A stretch of DNA of 64,000 nt, taken from positions 260,429 through 324,428 of the IMG/VR virus record IMGVR_UViG_3300033997_000478; one strand, written 5' to 3'. The number at the start of each line of letters is the position of its first letter. Position 1 is the first letter of the stretch. This document shows positions 893-64,000 of the stretch, piece after piece. The notes beneath the pieces are model-generated. The model was given only the letters and a program-made list of their open reading frames with translations, made no database searches and was not told the DNA's origin. The translations under genes were made by a program, and so were the position numbers.

Positions 893-901
893 GGAGACTC
901 C

Positions 902-2893: not shown

Positions 2894-2898
2894 GACGA

Positions 2899-2946
2899 CA
2901 TAACGCCCCCTCCTTCGGGAGGGGGTTTATGCTGCCCTTTTTTCTT
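2899..2946 (+). terminator. Hairpin framed by CATAA/TTTATG, followed by U-tract
   Basis: cataacgCCCCCTCC ttcg GGAGGGGG tttatg ... ctttttttctt. Confidence 0.8.
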
Positions 2947-3011
2947 AGTCCTATCTTGTGTGCGCCGCTGTTGCGGCTAAGAATTTCTTCGCCCTCTTTG
3001 AGGAATGTTGC

Positions 3012-15089: not shown

Positions 15090-15090
15090 A

Positions 15091-15121
15091 CATAGCGGAG
15101 GTCTTCGGACCTCCGTTTATG
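15091..15121 (+). terminator. CATA/TTTATG-framed hairpin
   Basis: catag CGGAGGTC ttcg GACCTCCG tttatg. Confidence 0.7.
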
Positions 15122-15189
15122 TCGCTTATACTGTGACTAGCCTGGCCTGACGGGCTTTGCTTAACCTCTTTATCCACGGAGCACTCTCG

Positions 15190-16065
15190 ATGGCGACCAC
15201 CACGCCGCGCGTTATCACCCGTACCATCAACGGCACGCGCATCCTCACCGCCCTGCAGCGCGGTAAGCCGTACACCCACGTCCCGTACACCACGCTCAAC
15301 GAGCTGCACGGCATCCAAGCCGGCGTGATGCCGGACAACGCCGAGACCCCGCGCGTGCAGTATTTCTGCATTGGCACGAATGGTCATGTGAACCGCACCG
15401 GCGCTGACGGTGGTCACTACACCTCTGCCCGCAAGCATGGGCCGGACGATTTCGGCCTGTACACCCAGATCCCGTTCCTGCTGCGCCGTCCCGGTGAAGA
15501 CCTGACCCAGGACCAGCGTCAGAAGTACGCCCTGCGCAAGATCATCGAGATCAATGGCGAGAACTGGATCGCCTACTATCTGATGAAGATCCCGACTGAC
15601 ACCGAGCCGGTGCGCATGCTGCTCAACACGGTCAAGGACGGCGTCACCACCACCGAGCCGTTCATCCCGAAGGCTTCCAACCTGCAGCCGCAGCCGAAGG
15701 AACCGCCGGCCAATGGCGCCATCAGCACCAACGGCTCGTACTTGTCGGTGACCTCGATGACCGACATCGTGCTCAGCGCCCTGGACGTCACCGAACAGAT
15801 CGAAGTTGCCAAGATCATCCACGGCAACCCCGAGCGCGCTCTGATCTCCGAGATCGGCCTGGTGGCCGCTTCGCCGAAGATCGTCACCTTCACCGATCCG
15901 GGCGGCGGCAACGTCCAGATGGAAGAAGCGGTCATGGCGCAGATCACCACCCACATCACCGGCCTGTGGCCTGTGGCCTTCGCCACCGAAGGTTTCCGTT
16001 TCGGTCTGGATCTGGGCGGCACCGAGCCGCTGATCGGTCTGGACACCACCAACACCACCCCCTAA
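15190..16065 (+). CDS. Conserved phiKZ-like virion structural protein (gp139-like by synteny)
   Basis: 291 aa from ATG 15190 (GGAG RBS). TLNE...YFCIGTNGH...IPFLLR...YALRK...AYYL motifs. Immediately upstream of the resolvase. Confidence 0.6.
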   Translation: MATTTPRVITRTINGTRILTALQRGKPYTHVPYTTLNELHGIQAGVMPDNAETPRVQYFCIGTNGHVNRTGADGGHYTSARKHGPDDFGLYTQIPFLLRRPGEDLTQDQRQKYALRKIIEINGENWIAYYLMKIPTDTEPVRMLLNTVKDGVTTTEPFIPKASNLQPQPKEPPANGAISTNGSYLSVTSMTDIVLSALDVTEQIEVAKIIHGNPERALISEIGLVAASPKIVTFTDPGGGNVQMEEAVMAQITTHITGLWPVAFATEGFRFGLDLGGTEPLIGLDTTNTTP

Positions 16066-26131: not shown

Positions 26132-26168
26132 CATAAAGCAGGGGCCCTTCGGGGCCCCTGCACTTATG
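26132..26168. terminator. Bidirectional hairpin at convergent junction
   Basis: cataaa GCAGGGGCCC ttcg GGGCCCCTGC ac ttatg (stem slightly offset by the loop); the GNAT stop codon lies within the TTATG. Confidence 0.75.
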
Positions 26169-26646
26169 CCGGCATGACGGCGAACGGTACGCGACTCATG
26201 AACAGACGGGTGGTGAGCTCGCCCACCACCTTGAACCCCAGCGACGTGTAGAGCTTGATGGCAGCGGCGTTGCCCGGCATGACGTAAAGCGTCTGCAAAT
26301 TGTGGTGCTGGATGTATTGCGTTGCCAGACCCAGGCCGCGGTAAGTCGGGGCGATGAAGATCTGCCCCAAATGCAGTCGGTTGGCATCATAGCGAGCATA
26401 CCCCACCAACTCGTCGAACAGATAGATGCCCTCTACCTTCAGGTTGTACACCATGGAGCGATGCAGACGCAGTACATCCTTGTCGACATCGGTGTTGTCA
26501 ACCAGATTCCGGCAAAGGAACGGACTCAGATCCTCCCAACTGATCGGTCGATACTCGGGAGCCTTCTGAAGCTGTAGCTTGCGAGTGAGGTACTTAGCAT
26601 CCGGCTTCGGTGGGTCGATTTTACCAAAACGATAGTAGTGGTCCAT
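26164..26646 (-). CDS. GNAT-family acetyltransferase
   Basis: LGQIFIAPTYRGLGLAT (acetyl-CoA motif A) and N.AAIKLYTSLGF (motif B). Confidence 0.85.
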   Translation of the reverse strand: MDHYYRFGKIDPPKPDAKYLTRKLQLQKAPEYRPISWEDLSPFLCRNLVDNTDVDKDVLRLHRSMVYNLKVEGIYLFDELVGYARYDANRLHLGQIFIAPTYRGLGLATQYIQHHNLQTLYVMPGNAAAIKLYTSLGFKVVGELTTRLFMSRVPFAVMPA

Positions 26647-31413: not shown

Positions 31414-32034
31414 TTACGGGGTGGGCGTACCACCGTGGTCGATGATCCACTGCGTCAGCGCATTGTTCTTGGCAGTGAGTGCATCCACCAACGCGTTCAG
31501 TCGAATGACCTCAGCGTAGGGCGTGGTGCGATTGGTGATCTCCGCCTGACGACGGGTCTCCATGATCTCATGCTGCTCCTGACTGATCAGGCCGCTGAAC
31601 GGAGCGATGTGTTCTTGCACCGCCGACTCCACACCGATCGTGTCACTCACCACTTCGGCCACGTTGGCCTTCAGGTCAGTCAGATCGGTGGTATCCGGCA
31701 ACGGTCCAAGCAGTACCGAGAGCACCACCCGCTTGTAGGCCACACCGGTGACATCAGGGAAGGCCTCGATGTAGGTATCCGGCACGTGGATGACCGGCAG
31801 GGTCTCCGACTCCAGGGTGATGATGTTTGCACCCAGTGCCAGATCGGCCTCGTACTTGTCCCTGGTTTCGTCCTTGGGCAAGTAGAAACGCTTGAAGACG
31901 TCGTCGCCGCGTTCGATGAAGTCACGGAAGCTACGAATAGCGATGACTTCAAAGACGTGATCAGCCGGCGCATTCCACGGCGTCTTGAGCTTGAAGACAC
32001 CCCTGGCGTGCAGGGGTGGGGTCATGATGGCCAT
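31414..32034 (-). CDS. Conserved phiKZ-like hypothetical/virion protein
   Basis: 206 aa. TPP...G.F.L..PW...F.V.AIR...IHVPDTYIEAFP motifs and a C-terminal coiled coil. Confidence 0.6.
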   Translation of the reverse strand: MAIMTPPLHARGVFKLKTPWNAPADHVFEVIAIRSFRDFIERGDDVFKRFYLPKDETRDKYEADLALGANIITLESETLPVIHVPDTYIEAFPDVTGVAYKRVVLSVLLGPLPDTTDLTDLKANVAEVVSDTIGVESAVQEHIAPFSGLISQEQHEIMETRRQAEITNRTTPYAEVIRLNALVDALTAKNNALTQWIIDHGGTPTP

Positions 32035-44296: not shown

Positions 44297-44905
44297 ATGA
44301 CAGCCTGTACAAAGCTTTTAACAATGAACAAGACCGCATCCCCCAATTACAGCCGTTGGGCAGAAATGCACCGACGCTGCACCAATCCAGCTCATCCCGC
44401 CTACGCACAATATGGTGGGCGTGGCATTCGCGTTTGTGCTCGCTGGGATGAGCTGGCCAACTTCGACGCCGACATGGGCTATCCTCCAACTCCCAATCAC
44501 AGCATCGAACGCATCGACGTCAACGGGCATTACGAGCCCGGTAACTGTACGTGGGCCACGCCAAGGGAGCAGGCACGAAACCGCACCAATAACGTCCTCC
44601 ATCAGTTCGAAGGTAAGCATTACTTTCTTCAAGATCTTGCGGAGGAAAAGGGCGTATCTTTCCGCACACTAGACGATCGAATTCGTCGACAAGGAATGAC
44701 GCTGGAGGAAGCTCTCAGCAAGCCGACCACACGCCAAGGTAGTTCGTTTGTGGAAGTGGACGGCGTGAAGATGTCCAAGGCGCAGGCGGCTCGCAAGTTC
44801 GGCATTAGTCCCACCCTTCTCAGTCAGCGACTGAATAAGGGCATGTCGGTCAAAGAGGCTCTCACCAAACCACGTGTGATCACTGGACGGCCGCGAAACA
44901 CTTGA
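44297..44905 (+). mobile_element. Free-standing HNH-type homing endonuclease
   Basis: MHRRC.NP...YGGRGIRVCARW...SIERIDVNGHYEPGNCTWATPREQARN, then two tandem HTH-like repeats (...GMTLEEALSKP / ...GMSVKEALTKP). More AT-rich than flanking genes. Confidence 0.85.
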
Positions 44906-52106: not shown

Positions 52107-55100
52107 TTACTGGTGACGCACATCGATCGGCACACCACCGTTGAAGGTGTTGGTCGGTCGCGTGCTCTCCAGCCTTGCCGAAGACGGCGGAGTCGGAGGC
52201 CGTTGTTCGGCAACGGTTTGTTGCTGGGGTTGTTCTGCTTGCTTCTGGGTCTGACTGGAGCCCTGTTGTTGCATCAGGGGTTTACCTCCATTCATCTGCA
52301 TCCGCAGCAGCGTGACGATGTCGCCGGTATTGATGCGAGTCTGGCGTGCCTCTTCCACCAGGTTGGCCAAGAGCTGGGTGCTCTGGTTTTGCTGGGTAGC
52401 GGACACCTGACTTTCGTAGCGGTTCTGGATCTCAGTCTGACGAAGCGTTTCAGCGCGCTGGGCGCGTTCACGTTCTTGGGCCTGGAACTTAGCCGCCTCA
52501 TCGCTGCTTTGAGCAGCCGAGGTTGCACTCAATGCCGAGGTGCTGGAAATGTCCGGAGCCGGCATAGCCGACGAACCGGAAGGACCATTACCTGCACCCT
52601 GCGCCAGAATACCACCACCGGTCTTCTGCATGTCCGTCGCTTCGGCCGGAGCCTGACGCGGAACATCGGAGATTTCCGTTTCCGGCTTGGGCGGATTGAC
52701 ACCGCCGCCAGCGTTGGCTGTCGTGGTCGTGGTCGTGGGCGGGTAAGCCGAGTCGTTACCGACATTGGGCTTATTCCCCGTGGTATCCACGCTGGCCGTT
52801 ACGCCAGAGAAGTCTGCCTTACCTGCAGCGGCCGGAGCCGTGCCGGTGGGCTGCATGACCTGACCACCCAAACCTGCATCGCCGCCGTAGCCCTTGTAGG
52901 CATTGAGCATCTTGCGTTGCAGATCTGCGTACACCGCACCGATGGTACGGGGACGACTGTAGTCCGGCACCATCCTCTTACCTTCGCGCTTGGATTCGTA
53001 GAACACCCAAGCGTTGGCAGCGGCTGCACGCGGGAACGCCTTGACGGCATTCTCGTTGGGATCCTTGTTCAGGAACTGCGCAGCGCCTTCCGGACCGAGG
53101 AAGTGAGCCATGTACATGTCAGTAGCCGTCAGCGGCTTCTTGACCTTCTTGGACACGTAACTGTAGTTGGACTTCAGGTACAGCGCACCCATGATGGCAT
53201 TGGCACGCGAGTCCAGCGGACCGGTACCCGGAGCGATGCCGTACTTGCTGGCATGCTGGGCCATCGACTGACGCCACGTACCTGGGATGAACTGATACAG
53301 ACCCTGAGCTGCGGACGTACCGGGGCTGCCCAGCGGGTTGAAGCTGGACTCCACCATGCACATCGCATACAGCATGTTCGGATCGGTGCCGGTCATCTTG
53401 GCTACGGCATCGAGCATCGGCTTGAGCGCCGCAAAACGCTGCTTCACCGGCATCGCCGCCAGTTCCTGGTTACTGGGGATCTGGGGCAACGAATTGATGT
53501 CGCCGCCCGTACCACCGCCAGGATGCTGAATAGCCGTGCCGCCGGTCAATGCACCGTAGACCGCCTGACCCGGCGCCAACGCAGCCGAAGCTGCCGAAGT
53601 AGCTGCACCGGACCAATCACCAGCCTTGGCTTGGTTGTAGGCCTGCGAACCCAGGTCGGTCACCGTGGTGGCCACGTCCTTGACACGGTCGATTTGACGA
53701 CCCAGCCAGTTACGCTCACCACTCTTACCGCCGAGGAAGTCATCCACCTTGGCCTGACCGCGACCCATGGCATCGAGCATGTTGGCAATCATGCCCTTCT
53801 TGTTGGCTGCCTGAGCGTCCAGGCCATCGACCTTGGTTTCGCTCATCACCTTCTTGCTGACAATGCTTCGCAGAGCCAGCAGTGAACCCGTCGTTGCCGC
53901 TTGATCGGTCAGCAGCTTTTCCTGGGCACTCCACGGGGAAATCGTGACGTACCAGACCGAACGACCATCATCGTCCTTGGCTGCCATGATGTCTTGAGCC
54001 ATCTGAACCAACTGCTCACCCTTGAGGGTTTTCTCAGGTGCCGTCAGGTCGACGTTCTTGGCAATCTTGTCAGCCGAGCGAATGTAGGCAATCGCAGTGG
54101 GCAGGAAGCGCTTGTTGAACCAGATGCCCCAGCGCTCACGATCATCCGGCGTATTCGGCGTCAGGCCGAAGAATGCGCACGCCGTGGAGTAGGTAGCGTC
54201 CGTGTCCATGTTGTAGTATGCGCTACCGTCACTTGCCAGCTGGGTGTTCTTAGCCACGAACATTTCCAGAGCAATCAACGCACGGACACGATCGATCTCC
54301 AGTTCTGCCAGACCGTAAGTCCGCAGACGGATCGCTTGCAGCGGGGTGATCTTGTCGGCACGACCCAGCAGCGGCGGGAGTAGACCCGTCAGCGGCTTGG
54401 TCAGGAGAATCTTGCCCTTCAACGATTCAGTACCGCCAGCCTTGTTAGCCAGCTCCTGATTCTGAAGTGCCAGACCTTCCTTCTTGACCAACTTGTTGTT
54501 GTACCACTCAGCCGCCCATTGGGCTTGCATGCGGAACTGAGTCGGGGCCATGTCAGCCAGCTTGTTCAGCTTGTCGCCAAAGCGCTTGGACAGCGGACCG
54601 CCCTTGCCATCGACGTTGCACGACTTGACCGCCAGCAGGTAGGCCTGTTCGATCTTGTTCGGGTCATCGATGATGTCAGCCGGATCACCGGTCGGAGAAG
54701 CCAGTACAGCGTAGACGCTGCGGCTCACTCCGTTCCAGACACTGTTGACCAGCTTCAACCGCGACTCGGGCGGCAGCTTGTCAGTGTCATTCATCATGTC
54801 CAGCGAACTGGTCATCATGGAGGCCTTGAAGTTCTCCCCCGACACCTTCTTGGACGGATCGATCTTGTTCAGCTCGATGATCCATTGGGTGTAGACCGGC
54901 AAGAAGCGATTGGCGTACCAAGTCTGGAACGAACCGCGATCCAGCGAGGAGCCGCCGAACCACATCATGCCATCGTGGATACCAAACAGCTCGTAGGCGT
55001 CATTCATGGTGAAGTCGTCACCGCCACCCAGACTGGTCGACACGTTACCGGTCGCCTGGTCGATGTGCGGGGCCAGCTTTTCTTCCAGCTTGACAACCTT

Positions 55101-58100
55101 TTCCACCAACGAACGATTGTTGGACTCGATACCGTACTGAGCGAAGCGGAAGGCACGGATGGGGTTGAACTTACCGTAGCGAGCACCGCGGTAGGACTGC
55201 CAGGTTTGCAGCGAGGCTTGGCCGATCACAGCTGCAGCGATTGCTGCCGGGATAGCCCATGCCGGCGCCGTACCCACTGCGACAGTACCGCCCGCTGCTG
55301 CGGCCGTACCGCCAGCGGCCGTAGCCGCTGCACCACCGGCGGCTGCCGTAGCGCCACCAGCTGCGGCTGCGCCGCCACCTGCTGCTGCAGCACCGCCGGC
55401 CGTGCTGGCAGTGCCGGCCAGACCCACTGCACGAGCACCCCACATGCCGCCTTGGGCGACCATGCGAGCAGTCATTGCAGTATCGGCCACCTCAGCGCCC
55501 TTATCCAGAGCACCGCGAGCTGCGCTGTCCTTACCCACGCCGAACTTGTCCATCAACCAACCGCCACCACCGGCGAGCACGCTGGTGATCATCAAGCCCT
55601 TCGCGCTGAACAGGCCCTTGCCCTTACTCAGCAGGCCCTTACCGCCACGGAACAGACGAGCCAGAGCGCCCGCCTTCCCCTTCGGGATCGGCGGCGGGTT
55701 ACCCTTGGGAATCGGCGGCGGACCGCCCCGACCAGCACGTCGACGACCCTTTCCGCCACGACGGTTGTTCTTTCCCTTTTCCTGGGTCTTGCCCTTCTCG
55801 TTCTTATTCTCGCCCTTCTTACCCTTCTTGTCCTTTTCATCGCCGCCGTCACCACCCATGTAGTAGGTGTTGCCGCCGCCGTCACCGGAATCCTCGTCGC
55901 CTTCGTCCTCATCAGACGAACCGCCGAACAGACCCTTGGACTTATTTGCGATCCAGGACATCAGGGCAGCTACCGGGCCCTTCTTTTCTTCAGCCTTCTT
56001 CTCTTCGGCTTCCTTCTTCTTTTCGTCCTCAGCTTCCTTCTTGGCGAACTGCTCTTGCCACGAACCCTTACGGGGCGCAGCGCCGGGCATCCGCTTATCC
56101 AGCAGCTTGTAGATCTTCTCCAGCAGGTCCACTTGCTTAGCCCCGTGCTTTTCGAACGGGTTGAGCAGTGCACCGAGGAACTTGAAGGGGGCACCGAGCA
56201 TTCCACCGCCCAGACCCATCAGACCGCCGAACAGCTTACCATAGCCCTTCATAGCGCCGCCGAACAGAGCGGCAGCACCCTTGACCACACTACCAGCCGC
56301 GCCAGCCAGAGCGGTGAGGACCTTCATCGCCGGAGTCTTCAACGGCATCCCCCAACGACCAACCAGACCCGGATCATGGATCTCGCTGTCGTACAGGACC
56401 GTCTTGTCCGTCGCCGACGCCTTAGCGCCTTGCTTGGGCAGCTCCTTAATCTCACCGTGGATGTCGTCGTAGTCACGCACGACCTTACCCGGCTTCTTGT
56501 CATTGGCGTTGTAGTACAAGCCGGACTTCATCTTGCTCGCCTTCAGGCGCGGCTCACGCTCGCCCTTGACGTAGACGTCCACCTGCTTGTTCACAGTCCA
56601 CTTGGCCAAATCACCGACCGCGCGGCCAGCGGCACCCAGAATCTTGAACGGGGCGCCAAAGATACCGGCGTAACCACCCAGAACCGTACGGGTCAGCTTA
56701 CCTGCGCCCGTGAGGGCCAGCCGCACCAGACCATTGGGGCCCTTGGCGAAGATACCCTTGTCGAAGTCTTCCTGACTCAGCGCCGTGGAACCATCGACCA
56801 AGTCGGTGACCGGGCCGGTGACATCACGCCACGAGCGGATCTTCTTACCAGAGTTCTCATCGCGGTATTGGCCGAGCTTGATCTTCTGCGCCGTCAGTGC
56901 CGGCTTGCGCACGCCTTGGACGTAGATGTCCTTGGTGCCACGTAGTACGTCCATGGTCTTGTCCATGATCGCACCAGTGATCGAGGTGCCCACCTTGGTG
57001 ATACCGCGGGCGCCACTGAACAGGCCGCTGTAGATTCCCTTGGTGTAGGCCCACATCCCCTTGCCCAGACCCTTCGCACCGGCCCATGCACCGCCCACGC
57101 CCTTGACGAAGATCGTATCCAGAATGCCCTTACGGAACATCCCGGCCTTTTCTCCGTCCTGACCCTGGGTGGCCAGCAAACCGGCGATCGCCTTCAAGAC
57201 TTCCAGCTGTTCGCTGTTGAGGCGAATCAGTTCTGGACCTTCAGCAAAAGTGGCCTGCATCATCGTGCCGTCAGCAGCTGCCGCATTGCTGGGCGTATAG
57301 GCTGCTTGATGGATTGCACGACGACGGCCGAGGATGGACTGTGCGCGCGCCTTGGCACGCTCAACCACGCCACGCAGGAACTCACCACCGCGACGTGCCA
57401 GCTTGGCCAGATCACCGGTGGTGACCACGGTCTCGCCAGTTTCGTCAACGACCGGACCTGCGATCTTGTCGACCGAGTCAATCGTCTCGTTGGTGATGGC
57501 GTCCTTGTAATCGCCGTTGCGCATCTTGGTGCCGGACAACAGGACATCGCCGGTAGCGCCGTTGACCACGTCAAACGCACCATCCTCCGGAATCGGCGGC
57601 GGTTCGGATCGACGGAAGACGTCACGGATACCGGAGGCAACCTTGTTGATCGCTCCGCTGACGTTGAAGGTGTAGACCTTACCGTCCAGATCCACCAGAC
57701 CATGGGAGAGCACGCTCGGGTCGATGACGACCTCGTTGGTGGTCAGGTCGCGCACAGCGCCCTTGACGTCCTCCCACTTCTCCAGGATCTTGCCAGTGGC
57801 AGCATCGGCGTATTGACCCGCACGCAGCTTACCTGCTTGCAGAACCGCCTTGGAACCACCGGCCACGTACAAGTCCTTCAGCTCCCGGCCCTTGGTGCCG
57901 AAGAAGTCCTTGGCCTTATCGGTGGCCATGTCTTTCAGACGATCGGTAGCCGAACGCTTCTCCATCTTGATGTCATCGAAGGAGGCGCTGCCGACCATGT
58001 CCAAGAACTTGGAAACCTTCAACTTCGGACGAAAGCCTTCGAACTCCAGCAGACCCGCTTCTTCCAGCAGTTCCTGCATACCAGCCGAGACGTAAACGCC

Positions 58101-59876
58101 TGCTGCCGAAGAAGGAATGGCCGAACCGAAGTTGAGGTTGTTGAACTGCTCATCCATCTGGTCCATCCACACATGGTCGGTGGAACCGTCTTGACGACGG
58201 CCGGACTTGGAGAAGATCTGTGACAGTTCCGCCTTCGCGGTCGGGGAGAGCTCGGGGGTGTTGATGCCGGGGTTGATGTAACGGTTGATGTCAAACTCGA
58301 CACCTTCGGCCGAGTCCATCTGGATCTGGCGGCTGAACTCACGCATGGTGTTGGAGGAGATCGGACGACCACCTGCCAGCGCCTTGATGAAGTCCTCCAC
58401 GTCGCGACGGGAGGCAGCCAGCTTTTCCGGTTCAGCGATGCGGCGGGTTATGTCCTTGGCCGCTTCGCTCATCGTGGTGAACTTGCCACGCTCGATGTTG
58501 TACACCTGACGCTTGGCGTTGGGGTCCAGCACCCGCGCGGTGTTGTGTTCGATGCGACTCAGCAGGCCGGGGATGATTTCCACCAGTGTCTTGCGGGACA
58601 GCTTGTCCCACGATGCCGGCTTGTCCATCGCATCCAGACCGTGGCGACCAATACTGGTGTCCAGTCGGTGCGTGCGGATCTGGTCCTTGATGATTTCCTC
58701 GATCAGGCCGCCCAGACCCTCGCGGCTGGTAGCCGTACGGGCCCACTTGTTGGCCTTCTGCGGGATGTTGCGGATAAAGCGGTTTGCGCGCGCACCCTTC
58801 TGCGCCAGCTGCGGATACTTCTTCTCCAGCCACTGACGGACCGGACCGGAAAGCATACGCACTGCGCCTTCAGCTGCCATACCGCCGCCAGCCTGCATCA
58901 GTACTTCCAGCAGCGGCATGTCATCGGCCATCTCCGAGCCCATGATGCCGTCACGACCCATACCGGCCAGGTCCTTGACGTTATCACGCAGTCGCTTGAA
59001 GGTGTCGCCCATGAAGCGCTTGGCGTAAGCGCCAGCCGAGTCTTGCAGGTTACCCAGCAGACGTTGGCGGAAGCTGTTGGTTGCCGAGTGCATGATGTTC
59101 TGCTTGGCGATGTCCGGCATGGCCGTATTCTTCACCAAGTCCACCAAGCTCATGTGGGTGCGACGAGCGGTCTCCACTTGCAGACGGAACTGGTCACGCT
59201 GTAGGTAGAAGGATCGGGTCTGCAACTCCAGCATACGTCGCTGGACGCGGTTGTTGACCTGATCGTTGTAGGCATTGAGCTGAGCCACGCCGGCTTGGAT
59301 CGCAGCCAGATGTTGAACCTGCTTGCGCGAGGTGCGCAGGTTCTGGCCGTGTAGGACCATGCGTTCAACGCGATCTTCAGCGCGATAGCGCGCGTCGATC
59401 TCGTCTTTGACTTCGAACACGCTGGCGAGCGAATCCTTCAGATCCTGCTCGTTCTGCTCGGCCGCCGTCATCGACTTGTACTGCTCACGCGGCTTGCCAA
59501 ATTCTTCCCACGCATCGTGAGTGAACTTGGGCGTGTACGTCTTCAGCTTCGGCAGATTGCGCTGGACAATACGACGCAGGGCCGGCATTGCCGGCTCCAT
59601 CTCCCTGCTGGCCGTATTGTATAGTTCTTCCGCCTCCCGATACCGTTCTTCAGCAAAATTGTAGACCGAACCGTAACCTCGCGGCAACGCATTCGAAACA
59701 ATCGTGCCAATCATCGCCGGAGACTTGAACGCATCGCGCGCACCAGCTGCAAAGCTGGAGGTGGCGCGGGCGATCACGCCTCGGTTGGTTCTCTGATTGA
59801 CAGGCGCGAACGGATCGGGGAAATCGTAATCAAGATCGCGACCCCAGTCGGAGTCGTCGAGTTGTTTCTGCGCCAT
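52107..59876 (-). CDS. Tape measure / tail-associated lytic transglycosylase (phiKZ gp181-like)
   Basis: 2589 aa. SLT domain at about 53050-53400 (AMCMVESSFNP...AQGLYQFIPGTW...MYMAHFLG). Long helical N-terminus and a Gly/Ala hydrophobic stretch. Confidence 0.88.
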   Translation of the reverse strand: MAQKQLDDSDWGRDLDYDFPDPFAPVNQRTNRGVIARATSSFAAGARDAFKSPAMIGTIVSNALPRGYGSVYNFAEERYREAEELYNTASREMEPAMPALRRIVQRNLPKLKTYTPKFTHDAWEEFGKPREQYKSMTAAEQNEQDLKDSLASVFEVKDEIDARYRAEDRVERMVLHGQNLRTSRKQVQHLAAIQAGVAQLNAYNDQVNNRVQRRMLELQTRSFYLQRDQFRLQVETARRTHMSLVDLVKNTAMPDIAKQNIMHSATNSFRQRLLGNLQDSAGAYAKRFMGDTFKRLRDNVKDLAGMGRDGIMGSEMADDMPLLEVLMQAGGGMAAEGAVRMLSGPVRQWLEKKYPQLAQKGARANRFIRNIPQKANKWARTATSREGLGGLIEEIIKDQIRTHRLDTSIGRHGLDAMDKPASWDKLSRKTLVEIIPGLLSRIEHNTARVLDPNAKRQVYNIERGKFTTMSEAAKDITRRIAEPEKLAASRRDVEDFIKALAGGRPISSNTMREFSRQIQMDSAEGVEFDINRYINPGINTPELSPTAKAELSQIFSKSGRRQDGSTDHVWMDQMDEQFNNLNFGSAIPSSAAGVYVSAGMQELLEEAGLLEFEGFRPKLKVSKFLDMVGSASFDDIKMEKRSATDRLKDMATDKAKDFFGTKGRELKDLYVAGGSKAVLQAGKLRAGQYADAATGKILEKWEDVKGAVRDLTTNEVVIDPSVLSHGLVDLDGKVYTFNVSGAINKVASGIRDVFRRSEPPPIPEDGAFDVVNGATGDVLLSGTKMRNGDYKDAITNETIDSVDKIAGPVVDETGETVVTTGDLAKLARRGGEFLRGVVERAKARAQSILGRRRAIHQAAYTPSNAAAADGTMMQATFAEGPELIRLNSEQLEVLKAIAGLLATQGQDGEKAGMFRKGILDTIFVKGVGGAWAGAKGLGKGMWAYTKGIYSGLFSGARGITKVGTSITGAIMDKTMDVLRGTKDIYVQGVRKPALTAQKIKLGQYRDENSGKKIRSWRDVTGPVTDLVDGSTALSQEDFDKGIFAKGPNGLVRLALTGAGKLTRTVLGGYAGIFGAPFKILGAAGRAVGDLAKWTVNKQVDVYVKGEREPRLKASKMKSGLYYNANDKKPGKVVRDYDDIHGEIKELPKQGAKASATDKTVLYDSEIHDPGLVGRWGMPLKTPAMKVLTALAGAAGSVVKGAAALFGGAMKGYGKLFGGLMGLGGGMLGAPFKFLGALLNPFEKHGAKQVDLLEKIYKLLDKRMPGAAPRKGSWQEQFAKKEAEDEKKKEAEEKKAEEKKGPVAALMSWIANKSKGLFGGSSDEDEGDEDSGDGGGNTYYMGGDGGDEKDKKGKKGENKNEKGKTQEKGKNNRRGGKGRRRAGRGGPPPIPKGNPPPIPKGKAGALARLFRGGKGLLSKGKGLFSAKGLMITSVLAGGGGWLMDKFGVGKDSAARGALDKGAEVADTAMTARMVAQGGMWGARAVGLAGTASTAGGAAAAGGGAAAAGGATAAAGGAAATAAGGTAAAAGGTVAVGTAPAWAIPAAIAAAVIGQASLQTWQSYRGARYGKFNPIRAFRFAQYGIESNNRSLVEKVVKLEEKLAPHIDQATGNVSTSLGGGDDFTMNDAYELFGIHDGMMWFGGSSLDRGSFQTWYANRFLPVYTQWIIELNKIDPSKKVSGENFKASMMTSSLDMMNDTDKLPPESRLKLVNSVWNGVSRSVYAVLASPTGDPADIIDDPNKIEQAYLLAVKSCNVDGKGGPLSKRFGDKLNKLADMAPTQFRMQAQWAAEWYNNKLVKKEGLALQNQELANKAGGTESLKGKILLTKPLTGLLPPLLGRADKITPLQAIRLRTYGLAELEIDRVRALIALEMFVAKNTQLASDGSAYYNMDTDATYSTACAFFGLTPNTPDDRERWGIWFNKRFLPTAIAYIRSADKIAKNVDLTAPEKTLKGEQLVQMAQDIMAAKDDDGRSVWYVTISPWSAQEKLLTDQAATTGSLLALRSIVSKKVMSETKVDGLDAQAANKKGMIANMLDAMGRGQAKVDDFLGGKSGERNWLGRQIDRVKDVATTVTDLGSQAYNQAKAGDWSGAATSAASAALAPGQAVYGALTGGTAIQHPGGGTGGDINSLPQIPSNQELAAMPVKQRFAALKPMLDAVAKMTGTDPNMLYAMCMVESSFNPLGSPGTSAAQGLYQFIPGTWRQSMAQHASKYGIAPGTGPLDSRANAIMGALYLKSNYSYVSKKVKKPLTATDMYMAHFLGPEGAAQFLNKDPNENAVKAFPRAAAANAWVFYESKREGKRMVPDYSRPRTIGAVYADLQRKMLNAYKGYGGDAGLGGQVMQPTGTAPAAAGKADFSGVTASVDTTGNKPNVGNDSAYPPTTTTTTANAGGGVNPPKPETEISDVPRQAPAEATDMQKTGGGILAQGAGNGPSGSSAMPAPDISSTSALSATSAAQSSDEAAKFQAQERERAQRAETLRQTEIQNRYESQVSATQQNQSTQLLANLVEEARQTRINTGDIVTLLRMQMNGGKPLMQQQGSSQTQKQAEQPQQQTVAEQRPPTPPSSARLESTRPTNTFNGGVPIDVRHQ

Positions 59877-59941: not shown

Positions 59942-61498
59942 ATGGTCCCCCGTATGGGTTTCGAAGCCGAAGGCGATGACTGGGACGTCCCAGTTCCACC
60001 CAGTCGCCCAACGATGAGCGCGCAGGCCCCGATGGGTCAGCCGTTCAATTTGAACATCCTTCAGATTACCCCGCAGATGCAGGCGCTGATGAAGCCTGTC
60101 ACCAGCGTGGACTACTACGAAAACGTCAAGCGAGATCTGGATGAGAACGGTCTGTTCTCGATCAGTATCTTCGGTCGTATGGGCGATGAAGCCCGCGACA
60201 TGCGTTTCTCTTACATCGACATCAAGACCGAAATCTTCCACCCGGTGATCTACGATCGTCTGGTGAAGCTCAAGAAGCTTTATGGTGGCATCATCGAGGG
60301 TAAGCGGTACGCCCTGTGGGATGACAAGCAGAAGGACTTTGTCCCCGCCAATGAATTGGACGGTCAAACCGGTTATGCCTTCTTCTGCTCGCACTGGAAG
60401 GACATCGTCTTTACCCGCAACAGCTCGGACAAGCGCGACATGCGTGCCCAGCTGGTGGAAAAGTTCCGCGACGTTGCCCTGACCTCCAAGATCATCGTGA
60501 TCCCGGCTGGTCTGCGAGACATCGAGGTCGACGATGAAGGGCGTGACACCGTCGGTGACATCAATGCCCTGTACCGCAAGCTGATCTCGGTCTCAGCACG
60601 CATCCCCAATCACGACAACGTCAAGAACGACCCGTCGCACGATCTGGCGCGCATGCTGTTGCAGACGGCGTTCAACGAACTGTACAACATGCTGGAGACG
60701 ATGATCTCCGGCAAGCGTGGTATGTTCCAGGCCAAGTGGGCTTCGCGTAACGTGGTGGACTCCACCCGTAACGTGATCACCGCCATGGACACCTCGGTGG
60801 AGCACATGACTGCGGTCAATGCCCCGCGACCGACCGATACCTACGTCGGCATGTGGCAGCTCTCCCGTGCGCTGGCCCCGCTGACCATCCATCAGCTGAT
60901 GACCACCTATCTGAGTCAGATCTTCTCCTACGGTGAACGCACAGCCCGACTGGTTGATCCGGTCACCCTGCGCGCTGAAATGGTGGACATCTCCTCCGAC
61001 GCCCACGACATGTGGAATACGGTGGAAGGTCTGGAGAAGGTCATTACCTCCTACCGCGAACTGTCGCTGCGCGACAAGCCGGTGATGGTGGACGATCGCT
61101 ACCTCGCCTTGATCTACGTCCCTGAAGAAGAGCGCAATGGCTACAAGTCGTTCCGCATTTTCTCCGACATCGAGGAGCTGCCCTCTTGGGCCAGTCGAAA
61201 GGACGTGCGACCGATCAACCTGATGGAGTTGCTCTACCTGTCCGGATACAAGATCTGGAACGATCAGGTGGGTAGCGTCACCCGTTACCCGATTTCCGGT
61301 ATCGGCAGTATCTATCCAACCACCGTCTATGCCAAGACGACCGTGGTGGGTGAGGTGCGTCGTGAACTGGGAATGGACTGGGAACCGCTGACTGACGATA
61401 ACACTTCGTTGGCACCGGAGTTCCCCACCTACGAGCCGCTGGCCTATCAGGACAGCCTCGTGATCCACAGTACCCGCCTTGCGGGTCTGGGCGCCGAT
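59942..61498 (+). CDS. rpoC: Virion RNA polymerase beta-prime subunit (phiKZ gp180-like), exon 1
   Basis: GLFSISIFG, IIVIPAGLRD, SGKRG...SRNV and RYP motifs of beta-prime. Ends GLGAD; spliced to exon 2 this restores GADFDGD. Confidence 0.92.
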
Positions 61499-61895
61499 AA
61501 CCCGTGGTTTCGCCACGGGGATGTCCGCCGCAACTGCGAAGTTGCGTGCGAGTTCCCTTAATTGCTGGAAACTCCTGTTAAACCAGTTGGCTACAACGTG
61601 GGGCGGAAGCCCGAGCGTGAATGCTTGAAAACAACTGGGTAGGGACAATCAGCAGCTGATCCCCTCTATGTACCTGCTTTTAAGCGTGGAGTGTGGGGAG
61701 AGTTCAACGACTATCCCGTGGCTGGGAGTACATCGCAATGGGCGATGGAAATAGGGAAGCTCTCGTTGAGTGTCGGGCAATACGCTCCGAGAGTAAGATA
61801 TAGTCTGGCCTGCATGGAAACATGCAGCAGTGTGAGCTGAGTTGCGGCAGCGTAGCACGCGCTGAAGGGGAAACGACCTTCGGCGGAACATAGCG
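61499..61895 (+). mobile_element. Group I self-splicing intron (IA2-like), ORF-less, 397 nt
   Basis: 5-prime exon ends in U and intron ends in G. P3 GAGTTCCC(61550)/GGGAAGCTC(61754); P4 TGCTG(61563)/CAGCA(61650); P7 GACTA(61709)/TAGTC(61801). R GTTCAACGACTA and S AAGATATAGTC. P2 and P9 carry GNRA loops. Two extra hairpins between P7 and P3. Confidence 0.95.
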
Positions 61896-62075
61896 TTCGA
61901 TGGTGACACCGCAAGTTTCATCGCATGTGTGACCGATGCCAAAGATACGGTCAAGCAGTACTTGAACTCGCGCAAGGCCTACGTCGATCCGATCGGCGGC
62001 CTGCGTACCTCAGCGGGTGTGCATACGACGGAACTGTTCCTGCGTAGCTTCACCGGCGATCCGATCGAGGAGTAA
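61896..62075 (+). CDS. rpoC: Virion RNA polymerase beta-prime subunit, exon 2
   Basis: TTC GAT GGT GAC ACC... = FDGDTASFIACVTDAKDTVKQYLNSRKAYVDPIGGLRTSAGVHTTELFLRSFTGDPIEE*, 59 aa. Absent from the ORF track. Confidence 0.92.
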   Translation, partial: FDGDTASFIACVTDAKDTVKQYLNSRKAYVDPIGGLRTSAGVHTTELFLRSFTGDPIEE

Positions 62076-62077
62076 CA

Positions 62078-63376
62078 ATGAAGACCAAGCAAGACCTCGA
62101 CTCGCTGATCGTGTCGATGGAGCAGCTGGAACAGCTGCAGAACTCGATGGAGATCACCTCCCAGATCAGTCTGGAGAGCATGGATCAGTCGAGCATGTAC
62201 ATCTACGGTAACAAGCTCAACGAGATCCGGCAGGGCGTCGGTTTGGAGGCGCTGGAGTTCCAGGACGTCAAGGACATGTTCGCGGCCATGGGTAAGACGG
62301 CTGTGGCCATGGGACAGGGTTTCATGAAGTTCTTGGACAAGGTCCACGAAACCGTGGATAGCACCTACCTGGTCAAGACCAAGCGTATCCGCAAGCAGTT
62401 CGAGGCGTTGGGCGAGGCCAACCCTAAGAGCGAGCAAATGGAGCGCCCGGCCATTGCCAAGAACCTGTCCATCGGCGGCCAGTTCCCGGACAACTTTGCA
62501 CAGGTCACCAAAGACCTGATCGAGTTCTCCAAGCACACCACCGCCACGGCCATCCCGGAGTTGGCATCGATGACCCGTCGCTGCGCGCAGCGCTTGGAAG
62601 CCAAACGCTTCATGGGTAACGATGCGTTCCAAGCTGAGGTCATGGAACTGGCGGCGATCATCGCCTCGTCCAAGACGCCGATGCAGCTGTACAGCTTGGA
62701 ACAGACTCAAGAGCTGTATCCGGGTAACCGCACGATCTTCAGCACGATCAAGCCCAAGCGTCCGTCGCGTCCGCCGAACATCTCCAACGCCGCTGCGCGT
62801 AAGGTGGTCGATGCGGTCAGCCACATGACCATCGGTATCGTCTCCAACCCCAAGTCGGCCAACGGCAAGGGACCGACGGTGATTCCGGTGCTCTACCCGG
62901 CCGAAGCCCTGCGGATGCTCAACTACACCGATGCCCTGTTGCACGAGGTCATCCGGGTGAACCAAGCGGCCAAGCCGTTCCGCAATGACAAGCATCCTTC
63001 GACCATGTCGCTGATGCTGTCTGGGTTCTACCACGGGGTGGCCAAAACCTTCGATGACTTCTGGACTTCCTCGGAAGACGGCTTTGGTGAATTCGAAGGT
63101 GCGCAAGGTGGAGAGATGCGCCGCATCCAACCCGGTAAGAAGGGAATGATGGGCGTGTTGAATGATGGTATGCAGAGGACTGTTTCCAACCTCAGCATGG
63201 AATCCAAGGTGGACGAGGACGAGCGTCGTGTTCTCGCTGTCTGGGTGGCCCGTTATCTCAAGCTCTCCGCGGTGGATCACATCCGCACCGCCCAAGCTCT
63301 CCAGATCCTCCTGCTGGCTGTTGCCCGCGGCTACATCGAGTATCTCGAAGAGAGTCTGAAGTACTACGAGCAATGA
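62078..63376 (+). CDS. Putative internal head protein with multiple S-x-E sites
   Basis: 432 aa. VSME, NSME and ISLE near the N-terminus and LSME near the C-terminus. Confidence 0.6.
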   Translation: MKTKQDLDSLIVSMEQLEQLQNSMEITSQISLESMDQSSMYIYGNKLNEIRQGVGLEALEFQDVKDMFAAMGKTAVAMGQGFMKFLDKVHETVDSTYLVKTKRIRKQFEALGEANPKSEQMERPAIAKNLSIGGQFPDNFAQVTKDLIEFSKHTTATAIPELASMTRRCAQRLEAKRFMGNDAFQAEVMELAAIIASSKTPMQLYSLEQTQELYPGNRTIFSTIKPKRPSRPPNISNAAARKVVDAVSHMTIGIVSNPKSANGKGPTVIPVLYPAEALRMLNYTDALLHEVIRVNQAAKPFRNDKHPSTMSLMLSGFYHGVAKTFDDFWTSSEDGFGEFEGAQGGEMRRIQPGKKGMMGVLNDGMQRTVSNLSMESKVDEDERRVLAVWVARYLKLSAVDHIRTAQALQILLLAVARGYIEYLEESLKYYEQ

Positions 63377-63438: not shown

Positions 63439-64000
63439 ATGTCCGAACCGTTGCTCGAGCCGTCGATGGCTCTGAGCCTTGAGGAGTTCGTCGCGCTCAG
63501 CAACCCGGCTGAAGAAGATTTGCAGGTCAGCCTGGAGGCTCTCCAGTATGCCCCGTACTTCCGTCAGTTTGGTGCCATTCGTGCTGTGCAGCTGGCTGCC
63601 CCCAAGCTCAACAAGCTGGCCGACTTGCAACTGAGCAAGCTGGCCCTGATCCACTACCTGCCGCAAGAGCGTACCGATCTGGGCATGATGCCCGACGATC
63701 CGCTGCTGAACAACTACATGCGGTTGATGATGACCGAGCACATCACCGAGCTGGGTGATTCGCTGGGCAATCCTCGTCCGCTGCCGATGCCGGTGTCACA
63801 GCTCAAGCGTGACTACCGTCGTCTGAACCCGCGTGCTCGTGAGATCACCAATCTCGAATCGACGATGCGTGATGAGATCACCATCGTGGTGGAGAACTAC
63901 GCACTGCTCAACCACCTCTACCGCTACCCGATCAACTACTTCCGCCAGTACTACATGTGGTGGAACGTGCAGGCAGCACTGTGGAAGAACGTTGGCCGCA
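63439..64000 (+). CDS. Large virion protein, probably virion RNAP beta N-terminal part (phiKZ gp178-like), 3-prime partial
   Basis: Open frame from ATG 63439 to the window end (MSEPLLEPSMALSLEE...YFRQFG...GNPR...DYRR...NYALLNHLYRY...W). Assignment rests on synteny with beta-prime and recalled motifs. SLE propeptide sites present. Confidence 0.65.
   Translation, partial: MSEPLLEPSMALSLEEFVALSNPAEEDLQVSLEALQYAPYFRQFGAIRAVQLAAPKLNKLADLQLSKLALIHYLPQERTDLGMMPDDPLLNNYMRLMMTEHITELGDSLGNPRPLPMPVSQLKRDYRRLNPRAREITNLESTMRDEITIVVENYALLNHLYRYPINYFRQYYMWWNVQAALWKNVGR

What the first reader, a model, noticed from the sequence alone, without database searches (positions are those of the whole stretch)
61499..61895. 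ORF-less group I intron splits the catalytic DFDGD motif of the virion RNA polymerase beta-prime gene
Seen: the beta-prime ORF reads ...GLGAD and runs into a stop at 61559-61561, which appears to lose the active site. Removing 61499-61895 joins GAT to TTC GAT GGT GAC and gives GLGAD|FDGD plus a 59-aa exon 2 (578 aa in total). The intervening 397 nt have the U/G splice-site rule, P3, P4 and P7 pairings, R/S core sequences, GNRA-capped P2 and P9, and two hairpins between P7 and P3 (IA2-like). Established: the NADFDGD-type aspartates chelate the catalytic Mg2+, phiKZ-like phages package this RNAP for early transcription, and group I introns are known in RNAP genes of this phage group. Inference: infectivity of progeny depends on self-splicing at the most conserved codons of the enzyme. 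The intron has no homing endonuclease, so it is either a stranded relic or mobilised in trans, and it could act as a post-transcriptional gate on vRNAP supply. Automated annotation would call a truncated RNAP and miss exon 2.
Basis: partly seen in the sequence, partly recalled or inferred. Interest (0 to 1): 0.85.

Follow-up and report, generated by a model that had tools for sequence, protein, structure and literature searches.

The report
Self-splicing intron splits phage polymerase gene
A 397-base self-splicing RNA with no mobility gene of its own interrupts the catalytic-site codons of a giant phage's packaged RNA polymerase; it is real, but it is one more example of an intron already known at this exact spot in the model phage phiKZ.

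Summary
Window 61499-61895 (+) is a 397-nt group I intron (Rfam RF00028, 62.6 bits, E 1.7e-13). It follows U61498 and ends in G61895. Removing it joins GAD to FDGD and gives a 578-aa virion-RNAP beta-prime N-terminal subunit (phiKZ gp180 type). Intron-less homologues and a PHROG profile both run straight across the junction. Four diverged copies (window, Xanthomonas phages RTH11 and LucasX, one IMG/VR contig) keep 99% of 93 modelled base pairs, and 28 pairs show compensatory changes. The core has P7.1/P7.2 (IA type), GNRA-capped P2 and P9, and no conserved ORF.

It is not a new kind of element. In phiKZ itself gp180 is split at the same codon boundary by a related intron carrying the HNH endonuclease gp179, which the literature already treats as intron-encoded. 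OMKO1 has that intron with the endonuclease deleted. Other contigs show intact, decayed and absent endonucleases, and most phages have an empty site. The window copy is best read as an endonuclease-less descendant that must still splice. GenBank records, phiKZ's included, annotate a truncated gene. The "regulatory gate" idea has no support. Splicing itself is inferred, not shown.

The parts
59942..61498 (+). Exon 1 of the vRNAP beta-prime N-terminal subunit gene (gp180 type), 519 codons ending ...GLGAD
   Evidence: PHROG 2986 'RNA polymerase beta subunit', E 4.5e-179, profile positions 6-484. 68% aa identity to RTH11/LucasX and 41-53% to other chimallivirus gp180 homologues. A profile of homologues hits AR9 and cellular beta-prime subunits in PDB.
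61499..61895 (+). Group I intron, 397 nt, IA type, no ORF
   Evidence: Rfam RF00028, 62.6 bits, E 1.7e-13. 93 modelled pairs are 99.2% canonical in 4 copies, with 28 compensatory pairs against 1-3 in slid controls. The same insertion point is found in RTH11, LucasX and L009.
61496..61525 (+). P1: exon GAU (61496-61498) paired with guide sequence GUC (61523-61525), with U61498-G61523 as the splice-site wobble pair. The P1 loop holds a distal hairpin, 61501-61507 / 61513-61519.
   Evidence: The guide GUCC lies directly 5' of P2 in all same-site introns. In L043 the exon reads GACU and the guide GGUC, a matched change. The distal hairpin has 4 compensatory pairs. Rfam's own alignment mis-assigns the distal hairpin as P1.
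61528..61547 (+). P2 hairpin with GNRA loop GCGA
   Evidence: 6 of 8 pairs show compensatory changes among 4 copies; coordinates.
61553..61758 (+). P3 (61553-61558 / 61753-61758) enclosing P4-P6 and the 5' strand of P7
   Evidence: Invariant within the clade. 5 of 6 pairs are compensatory and 100% canonical across 12 family members.
61559..61561 (+). In-frame UAA that ends read-through from exon 1. It is the UAA of the conserved J3/4 (UAAUUGCUGG).
61562..61655 (+). P4 (61562-61568 / 61649-61655), P5 (61573-61576 / 61642-61645) and an extended P5a-c arm with a GGAA-capped tip and an A-rich bulge
   Evidence: P4 is invariant. P5, P5a and P5c have 2, 5 and 1 compensatory pairs.
61661..61698 (+). 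P6 / P6a / P6b
61709..61805 (+). P7 (GACUA 61709-61713 / UAGUC 61801-61805, pseudoknotted with P3), enclosing P7.1 (61714-61727), P7.2 (61731-61747), the 3' strand of P3, and P8 (61759-61794)
   Evidence: P7 is invariant in 12 introns. P7.1 and P7.2 have 1 and 3 compensatory pairs. The P8 outer stem differs yet stays paired in each copy.
61810..61885 (+). P9 (GAAA loop, 61810-61827), P9.1 (61830-61858), P9.2 (61860-61885)
   Evidence: P9.2 has 4 compensatory pairs, and P9.1 stems covary per sequence.
61895..61895 (+). Terminal G (omega-G) at the 3' splice site
   Evidence: The tail GAACAUA(G/A)CG is shared with the phiKZ, OMKO1 and PA7 introns.
61896..62075 (+). Exon 2: FDGDTASF... 59 codons plus TAA
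   Evidence: PHROG 2986 profile positions 485-538, directly continuing exon 1. It aligns to the C-termini of intron-less homologues. Codon-position identity of 68/79/40% indicates purifying selection. No conserved start codon is present.
52107..59876 (-). Context: 2589-aa gp181-like virion protein with an SLT lytic transglycosylase domain
   Evidence: Pfam SLT, E 2.1e-08. The same divergent arrangement is found in phiKZ, KTN4, RAY and others.
62078..63376 (+). Context: 432-aa ORF of unknown function between the beta-prime and beta genes, restricted to the window clade
   Evidence: tblastn hits only RTH11, LucasX, L009 and the window's own contigs. No Pfam family. The AF2 model is unusable, pLDDT 38.
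63541..64000 (+). Context: start of the gp178-like vRNAP beta gene, which runs off the window
   Evidence: tblastn with the KTN4 gp178 homologue, E 7e-09.

Best explanation
Window 61499-61895 is a functional self-splicing group I intron (IA type). It lies inside the gene for the N-terminal beta-prime-like subunit of the virion-packaged RNA polymerase of an uncultivated chimallivirus-like jumbo phage, related to Xanthomonas phages RTH11 and LucasX.

Proposed mechanism:
1. The primary transcript folds so that the last exon bases GAU pair with the internal guide GUC (P1, U-G wobble at the splice site).
2. A free guanosine bound in P7 attacks after U61498.
3. The freed exon then attacks after G61895 and the exons are ligated.
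4. The ligated mRNA encodes a 578-aa protein in which the three catalytic aspartates (GADFDGD) are contiguous.

Unspliced RNA can only give a 539-aa product that has one of the three aspartates. Active polymerase for packaging therefore depends on splicing.

The intron belongs to a family that homes into this exact site by means of an HNH endonuclease encoded in the P1 loop (phiKZ gp179). The window's lineage has lost that gene, so the intron is now inherited vertically. Only an exact deletion could remove it without killing the enzyme.

Shown here: the sequence, the boundaries, structure conservation, homology and the site's occupancy states. Inferred: splicing in vivo, packaging of the product, and loss rather than original absence of the endonuclease.
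For: Identity as a group I intron: the Rfam match is E 1.7e-13, with matches also in RTH11 (68.9 bits), L009 (63.1) and LucasX (56.8) at the same place.

Boundaries: four intron-less homologues read GAD|FDGDT or GGD|YDGDT uninterrupted. The PHROG profile is contiguous across the junction, 484|485.

Structure under selection: 99.2% of pairs are canonical, with 28 compensatory pairs against 1-3 in slid controls. RNAalifold finds 27 compensatory pairs. P3 and P6 covary across 12 family members. P1 is supported by the matched exon/guide change in L043.

Exon 2 is under purifying selection and has no start codon of its own.

Gene identity: there are PDB beta-prime hits, and GADFDGD aligns to AR9's SGDYDGD. 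Synteny is gp181-like / beta-prime / gp178-like.

Same-site relatives, in each occupancy state:
- phiKZ and Wadjak1: intron plus HNH gp179.
- L051: a 597-aa HNH_3 + NUMOD ORF. L052: the same ORF truncated to 208 aa.
- OMKO1 and fMGyn-Pae01: endonuclease deleted, 481 nt left.
- L043 and L079: ORF-less.
- KTN4, PA7, Xoo-sp14 and most others: empty site.

Long residence: intron GC tracks each host genome (0.55 vs 0.58 here, 0.37 vs 0.37 in OMKO1). Intron divergence follows the same order as exon divergence.

Literature: gp179 is treated as an intron-encoded endonuclease, orf179 deletions are viable, and insertions are polar on orf180 (PMC12676376). Introns in gp55 and gp180 are cited (PMC11512511).
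Against: No RNA or protein data exist for this phage, so splicing is inferred.

Long-read transcriptomics of phiKZ found no spliced reads for the gp56, gp72 or gp179 loci under the conditions used (PMC10914365). Even the type example therefore lacks direct RNA evidence in the papers I could read.

The exon part of P1 is only 3 bp. A P10 pairing (3' exon UU with AA 5' of the guide) is possible in the relatives but not in the window copy.

No endonuclease remnant is detectable in the window intron, so 'lost' as opposed to 'never had' rests on comparison with other lineages.

The window-type ribozyme scores higher against the nvRNAP beta-prime intron of PA7 (92 bits) than against the same-site phiKZ intron (74 bits). 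Its descent from a gp179-type same-site intron is therefore not proven.
Confidence: 0.88

Rival explanations
1. The ORF-less intron is still mobile. An endonuclease encoded elsewhere in the genome, either free-standing or inside another intron such as one in the paralogous nvRNAP beta-prime gene, cuts intron-less alleles and drives homing in trans ('collaborative homing').
For: The paralogous nvRNAP beta-prime gene of PA7 is split in the same motif, 6 nt upstream (N|ADFDGD), by a related intron. Its HNH is homologous to gp179 (30% identity, E 1e-16), so the two target sequences are similar. RTH11 and L009 share 93% intron identity against 79% exon identity, which could reflect later exchange. 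A clade-specific 432-aa ORF of unknown function sits directly downstream.
Against: No HNH, GIY-YIG or LAGLIDADG domain was found in 29 mid-sized ORFs of the window. There is no tblastn similarity to gp179-type endonucleases. RTH11 and LucasX each show only one place similar to this intron. The 432-aa ORF has no nuclease signature, is predicted all-helical at low confidence, and is absent from other intron-bearing lineages. There is no clear co-conversion signal in the flanking exons. Only 64 kb of a ~324-kb genome was visible.
Confidence: 0.1
2. The intron is kept because it benefits the phage. It could act as a shield that destroys the recognition site of gp179-type endonucleases brought in by co-infecting phages, or as a splicing-dependent control on the supply of virion polymerase. 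This reading is compatible with the best explanation and concerns why the intron persists.
For: An intron endonuclease at another vRNAP site acts as a weapon between PhiPA3 and phiKZ (PMC11620839). Endonuclease-plus, decayed and ORF-less alleles coexist among relatives. The ribozyme structure has been maintained across lineages whose exons are only ~70% identical.
Against: Structure is also conserved if splicing is merely obligatory, because any ribozyme defect would be lethal. Most chimalliviruses have an empty site: about 95% of 253 GenBank records and 76 of 80 IMG/VR loci. Nothing in the sequence indicates regulated splicing.
Confidence: 0.2
3. The gene is dead or is expressed as two pieces. 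Either the intron no longer splices and the beta-prime subunit is a pseudogene, or exon 2 is translated separately and associates with the truncated protein.
For: GenBank annotators called two separate ORFs in RTH11 and LucasX. Jumbo-phage RNAP subunits are naturally split at other positions (PMC7598289).
Against: The annotated small ORFs start at different, non-homologous places: inside the intron in RTH11, and after FDGDTASF in LucasX. A split between the first and second catalytic aspartates has no precedent. Both exons are under purifying selection, and the ribozyme shows 28 compensatory pairs, which is not expected of a dead element.
Confidence: 0.02

Closest known systems
phiKZ gp180 / gp179 intron (also in Wadjak1; inferred from blastn for T2P, U1B, U5, PhiPizzaParty, phi9_PA9, 'LC' and Wadjak2)
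   Same: Same gene (vRNAP beta-prime N-terminal subunit) and the identical insertion point, GAT|TTY = GAD|FDGD. Same guide sequence GUCC directly 5' of P2, same 3' tail GAACAUA(A/G)CG, identical P7, R and S elements, and P7.1/P7.2 present.
   Different: phiKZ's intron is 1443 nt and carries a 357-aa HNH_3 endonuclease in the P1 loop. It is AT-rich and lacks the P9.2 arm. The peripheral helices differ, and nhmmer similarity to the window type is moderate at 71-74 bits. The window intron has no ORF and has a short hairpin in the P1 loop.
OMKO1 / fMGyn-Pae01 ORF-less intron in the gp180 homologue
   Same: Same site and also ORF-less. Also annotated as a truncated gene.
   Different: It is demonstrably a recent deletion derivative of the phiKZ intron: 91% identical over the ribozyme, and it keeps the first and last ~50 nt of the endonuclease ORF. 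The window intron shows no such remnant.
nvRNAP beta-prime (gp55-type) intron with HNH, seen in PA7 and PA32
   Same: Same intron family and the best non-clade nhmmer match (92 bits, co-linear through the P9 tail, identical P9 stem). It splits the same catalytic motif.
   Different: It sits in the paralogous, non-virion polymerase gene. The insertion point is 6 nt upstream (N|ADFDGD). It carries an HNH gene.
PhiPA3 gp210 intron in vRNAP beta (gp209/211); 201phi2-1 gp273/274 intron
   Same: These are group I introns in virion RNAP genes of chimalliviruses, inserted next to conserved aspartates. The first has a characterised nicking HNH endonuclease (PMC11620839, PMC11512511).
   Different: They are in a different subunit (beta, gp178 homologue) and at a different site. 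I did not compare their ribozymes here.
T4 td / nrdB / sunY and Twort introns (subgroup IA2). This comparison comes from general knowledge and was not tested here.
   Same: Phage protein-coding hosts, insertion at conserved catalytic codons, P7.1/P7.2 between P7 and P3', and the existence of ORF-less forms alongside endonuclease-bearing forms.
   Different: Unrelated host genes. No sequence-level comparison or formal subgroup assignment was done.

Membership tests
Group I intron (Rfam RF00028) | Covariance-model score at or above the curated gathering threshold | tested here: met
   62.6 bits against a gathering score of 50, E 1.7e-13. Homologous copies score 56.8-68.9 bits.
Group I intron (Rfam RF00028) | Conserved core helices P3-P8, with P3 and P7 forming a pseudoknot, supported by covariation | tested here: met
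   93 pairs are 99.2% canonical with 28 compensatory. P3 has 5 of 6 compensatory pairs and P6 has 3 of 4 across 12 members. P7 is invariant.
Group I intron (Rfam RF00028) | 5' splice site after a U that forms a U-G wobble with the internal guide sequence in P1 | tested here: met
   U61498 pairs with G61523 within GAU/GUC. A matched exon/guide change is seen in L043 (GACU/GGUC). The exon part of P1 is short, at 3 bp.
Group I intron (Rfam RF00028) | Terminal G at the 3' splice site | tested here: met
   G61895, with the frame restored only at this boundary.
Group I intron (Rfam RF00028) | Guanosine-dependent self-splicing activity | not testable with these tools
   This needs in-vitro transcription with GTP/Mg2+, or cDNA from infected cells.
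Subgroup IA (IA2-like) | Two extra hairpins, P7.1 and P7.2, between P7 and the 3' strand of P3 | tested here: met
   P7.1 at 61714-61727 and P7.2 at 61731-61747, with 1 and 3 compensatory pairs.
Subgroup IA (IA2-like) | Formal assignment against subgroup-specific models or alignments | not tested
   No subgroup models were available. Rfam has a single group I family.
Mobile (homing) group I intron | Intron-encoded homing endonuclease ORF | tested here: not met
   The longest stop-free stretch is 81 codons and is not conserved among copies. There is no similarity to gp179, the PA7 HNH or ICP1 ORF80.
Mobile (homing) group I intron | Patchy distribution, with empty and occupied alleles of the same site among relatives | tested here: met
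   Occupied in about 14 of 253 GenBank records and 4 of 80 IMG/VR loci, in several separate lineages. Sister lineages such as Xoo-sp14 and KTN4 are empty.
Jumbo-phage virion RNAP beta-prime N-terminal subunit (phiKZ gp180 family) | Sequence homology to gp180 homologues and to beta-prime subunits | tested here: met
   PHROG 2986, E 4.5e-179. 314 phage records by tblastn, including RAY gp163 'vRNAP beta' subunit 1' and KTN4_220 'virion-associated'. The family profile hits AR9 beta-prime at E 2e-11 and cellular beta-prime subunits.
Jumbo-phage virion RNAP beta-prime N-terminal subunit (phiKZ gp180 family) | Catalytic (N)ADFDGD-type aspartate triad | tested here: met
   GADFDGD is present only after removal of the intron. 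D487, D489, G490 and D491 are invariant in homologues. The motif aligns to AR9's SGDYDGD.
Jumbo-phage virion RNAP beta-prime N-terminal subunit (phiKZ gp180 family) | Synteny with the gp181-like lysin and the gp178-like beta subunit | tested here: met
   SLT-domain giant ORF upstream on the minus strand, and the start of the gp178-like gene at 63541.
Jumbo-phage virion RNAP beta-prime N-terminal subunit (phiKZ gp180 family) | Presence of the protein in virions | not testable with these tools
   This needs virion mass spectrometry.

The most novel reading that the evidence does not exclude
One intron family has repeatedly colonised the catalytic aspartate motif of both beta-prime paralogues of chimalliviruses: GAD|FDGD in the virion enzyme and N|ADFDGD in the non-virion enzyme. 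ORF-less survivors such as this one may persist because an occupied site is immune to the HNH 'weapons' of co-infecting relatives. On this reading the window intron is a disarmed shield rather than junk.
Probability: 0.25. Interest if true: 0.55.

Novelty: new member of a known kind. Interest (0 to 1): 0.3.

Why it matters
There are three practical consequences.

1. The gp180-type gene is mis-annotated as truncated, and its catalytic exon is missed, in at least five GenBank genomes including the type phage phiKZ. Comparative and proteomic work on jumbo-phage polymerases should use the spliced product.
2. The site displays every stage of the homing cycle (empty, endonuclease-bearing, decayed, ORF-less) across cultured and uncultured phages. 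That makes it a convenient natural system for studying intron persistence and phage-phage competition, alongside the PhiPA3 gp210 case.
3. RTH11 and LucasX are cultured carriers in which splicing at the catalytic codons can be tested directly.

None of this changes the current understanding of group I introns or of these polymerases.

Tried and rejected
- Megablast of the gene against phages found nothing. Protein and 'distant' modes were needed instead.
- Pfam gave no significant family for either exon or for five full-length homologues.
- phmmer of exon 1 against PDB found nothing. Only the family profile reached beta-prime structures.
- Rfam's own alignment places P1 on the distal hairpin. 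I rejected that because it does not include the splice site, and replaced it with the GAU/GUC pairing.
- RNAalifold's pairing of GUCC with the GGGC of the P8 loop competes with P1 and has no covariation. I did not adopt it, though a tertiary contact cannot be excluded.
- The test for exon co-conversion next to the intron was inconclusive.
- A viral-contig scan with an invariant S/P9 20-mer returned only unrelated introns apart from the known copies.
Rerun with permitted rows, it gave pLDDT 38, so I made no fold search.
- I did not build a covariance model of the family. The alignment exceeds 400 columns, and calibration of a ~300-position model would exceed the time limit.
- Lavysh 2016 and Ceyssens 2014 are not held in the library, so their statements are cited only through papers that quote them.
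- I made no phylogeny of the ribozymes. Which relative is closest (the same-site phiKZ type or the nvRNAP type) remains open.

Full report
**Observation.** The region reads as the first stage described. The ORF 59942-61561 (+) ends ...STRLAGLGAD, followed by 20 read-through codons and TAA at 61559-61561. The last exon base is U61498, the intron starts at A61499 and ends at G61895, and the next bases are TTC GAT GGT GAC. Joining 59942-61498 to 61896-62075 gives 578 codons reading GLGAD|FDGDTASF. Rfam's group I intron model matches 61497-61827 at 62.6 bits (gathering score 50, E 1.7e-13). It is the only Rfam match in the window, even at a permissive threshold. The segment folds better than all 100 shuffles (z = -5.06).

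**Is the junction right?** Two independent lines say yes.
- PHROG family 2986 ('RNA polymerase beta subunit') matches exon 1 over profile positions 6-484 (E 4.5e-179) and exon 2 over positions 485-538. The two pieces abut exactly.
- Uninterrupted homologues from Xanthomonas phage Xoo-sp14, Burkholderia phage FLC9, Ralstonia phage RP31 and Erwinia phage RAY (gp163, annotated 'vRNAP beta' subunit 1') read GAD|FDGDT or GGD|YDGDT straight through, and they align with exon 2 to their C-termini.

Exon 2 shows the codon-position pattern of a translated sequence (identity 68/79/40% at positions 1/2/3) but has no conserved start codon.

**Gene identity.**
- The gene is flanked upstream, on the other strand, by a 2589-aa ORF with an SLT domain.
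- Downstream, after one extra ORF, lies the start of a gp178-like beta gene.
- This is the phiKZ gp181 / gp180 / gp178 arrangement seen in KTN4, OMKO1, RAY and phiKZ.
- A profile of five full-length homologues hits the beta-prime N-terminal subunit of phage AR9's RNAP (7S00/7S01, E 2e-11) and cellular beta-prime subunits. GADFDGD aligns to AR9's SGDYDGD.
- The closest cultured relatives are Xanthomonas phages RTH11 and LucasX (68% aa). LucasX is placed among chimalliviruses in a published core-gene tree.

**Structure.** Identical copies of the window's locus lie on two IMG/VR contigs, one of 324 kb. A further diverged copy is on a third contig (L009), and RTH11 and LucasX carry the intron at the same codon boundary. 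On an alignment of the four distinct copies I laid out the canonical architecture and counted pairs.
- Of 93 pairs, 99.2% of cells are canonical.
- 28 pairs show changes on both sides, against 1-3 when the 3' partners are slid by 1-3 columns. RNAalifold independently finds 27.
- P3, P4 and P7 are invariant within the clade. P1's distal hairpin, P2, P5/P5a, P7.1, P7.2, P8, P9.1 and P9.2 covary.
- Adding eight more distant family members brings compensatory support to P3 (5 of 6 pairs) and P6.
- The two hairpins between P7 and P3' (P7.1, P7.2) mark the IA type, and P2 and P9 carry GNRA loops.
- Rfam's alignment puts P1 on the distal hairpin. The true P1 is exon GAU (61496-61498) with guide GUC (61523-61525). 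GUCC lies directly 5' of P2 in every same-site intron. In contig L043 the splice point is one base later (GACU|) and the guide reads GGUC, a matched change.
- The in-frame stop at 61559 is the UAA of the conserved J3/4.

**No ORF.** No stop-free stretch exceeds 81 codons, and none is conserved in frame or strand among the copies. There is no similarity to the endonucleases of related introns.

**Relatives at the same site.** I ran a tblastn with the junction region of Xoo-sp14 and a blastn with the OMKO1 intron. They show that phiKZ itself is interrupted at the same boundary.
- In phiKZ, PHIKZ180 ends GGG GCG GAT|TAATTG. A 1443-nt intron follows, holding PHIKZ179 (357 aa, Pfam HNH_3) in the P1 loop and a ribozyme scoring 92 bits. 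The sequence resumes ...CATAACG|TTC GAC GGG GAC. Exon 2 is not annotated in the phiKZ record.
- Wadjak1 has the same layout. Eight further records match by blastn, and together these account for the ten two-place records. For those eight the shared layout is an inference.
- OMKO1 and fMGyn-Pae01 have the same intron reduced to 481 nt by an internal deletion of the endonuclease gene.
- KTN4, of the phiKZ species, is uninterrupted.
- Among 80 diverse IMG/VR loci fetched with the family profile, four are occupied. L051 has a 2294-nt intron with a 597-aa HNH_3 + I-HmuI-NUMOD ORF. L052 has the same intron with the ORF cut to 208 aa. L079 (384 nt) and L043 (398 nt) are ORF-less. One of the two seed patterns needs an intact motif, so occupied alleles are under-sampled.
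- The site therefore shows every stage of the homing cycle.

**Literature.** The literature already treats gp179 as an intron-encoded endonuclease and gp180 as intron-containing (PMC11512511, PMC10914365). It also reports that orf179 can be deleted, while transposon insertions in it are polar on orf180 (PMC12676376). I found no description of the Xanthomonas-type copy, and the LucasX genome paper mentions no intron.

**History of the window copy.**
- Its GC content (0.55) matches its exons (0.58), just as the OMKO1 copy (0.37) matches its own (0.37).
- Intron divergence among the four copies follows the order of exon divergence but is smaller: 75-80% against 69-72% identity for the window versus the others.
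- The nearest outgroup with an intron, L043 (57-60% aa), has a related ribozyme (81 bits). Xoo-sp14 (53%) has none.
- This fits long vertical residence in the clade after loss of the endonuclease.
- RTH11 and L009 are 93% identical in the intron against 79% in exon 1, which leaves room for later exchange. A look for co-converted exon flanks was inconclusive.
- By nhmmer the window type is nearer to the intron in the paralogous nvRNAP beta-prime gene of PA7 (92 bits) than to the same-site phiKZ type (74 bits). That PA7 intron splits the same motif two codons earlier, N|ADFDGD, and its HNH is homologous to gp179. Whether the family hopped between the two paralogous motifs is unresolved.

**Trans mobilisation and regulation.** No endonuclease domain was found among 29 mid-sized ORFs of the window. 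The 432-aa ORF between the beta-prime and beta genes is confined to the window clade, has no family match and gave an unusable model. No promoter-like or terminator-like signal stands out around the intron. Nothing bears on regulated splicing.

**Verdict.** This is a genuine, structurally conserved, ORF-less group I intron that must be removed to reconstitute the catalytic aspartate triad of the virion RNAP beta-prime subunit. It is a new member, in a Xanthomonas-phage-like lineage, of an intron family already known at this very site in phiKZ. Splicing, packaging and any benefit to the phage remain to be shown experimentally.

Noticed in passing
L016 (phiKZ AF399011) 468-3568; also L001, L002, L013, L014: GenBank records of phiKZ, RTH11, LucasX, OMKO1 and fMGyn-Pae01 annotate the gp180-type gene as ending at GAD. 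Exon 2 (FDGD...) is either missing or called as a small 'hypothetical protein' with an arbitrary start.
   Followed up: yes
L043 4957-5354: An ORF-less intron in the nearest outgroup of the window clade has its splice point shifted by one base (GAC T|...G|TC GAC), and its guide sequence has changed to match (GGUC instead of GUC). This is either a case of intron sliding or an independent insertion.
   Followed up: partly
L010 (PA7) about 2462-3841; L011 (PA32): The paralogous nvRNAP beta-prime gene (gp55 type) is split in the same catalytic motif, two codons earlier (N|ADFDGD), by a related intron carrying an HNH homologous to gp179. PA32 shows two group I hits in tandem there (3288-3533 and 3803-4124).
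   Followed up: partly
L052 about 7895-8299: A second, ORF-less group I intron (Rfam 55 bits) interrupts the vRNAP beta gene between residues equivalent to 594|595 of the KTN4 gp178 homologue. This is a different site from the PhiPA3 gp210 intron.
   Followed up: partly
L045 3519-5896: The beta-prime gene is intact at 4304-5896, but its first 22 codons are duplicated about 785 nt upstream. This looks like an insertion with a duplicated gene start. There is no Rfam match.
   Followed up: no
window 62078-63376 (+): A 432-aa ORF is inserted between the beta-prime and beta genes. It is found only in the window clade (42-46% identity among members), has no Pfam family, and is predicted helical at very low confidence. 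In other chimalliviruses the beta gene follows beta-prime directly.
   Followed up: partly
window 44297-44905 (+): A 202-aa ORF has a C-terminal HTH_psq domain (E 4e-05) and a non-significant resemblance to the PA7 intron HNH protein (tblastn E 0.76). It could be a DNA-binding remnant of a homing endonuclease or an unrelated regulator.
   Followed up: no
window 61559-61561: The stop that truncates read-through from exon 1 is the UAA of the conserved J3/4 segment. Read-through length varies from 0 to 21 codons among same-site introns.
   Followed up: yes
window 52107-59876 (-): The gp181-like giant ORF (2589 aa) contains long Gly/Ala/Lys-rich low-complexity stretches in addition to its SLT domain.
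   Followed up: no
window 14487-16065, 26167-26646, 31417-32034: Other recognisable genes are DUF7941, DUF7208 and DUF7194 proteins and a GNAT acetyltransferase. The 64 kb contains no tRNA genes and no other Rfam families.
   Followed up: no
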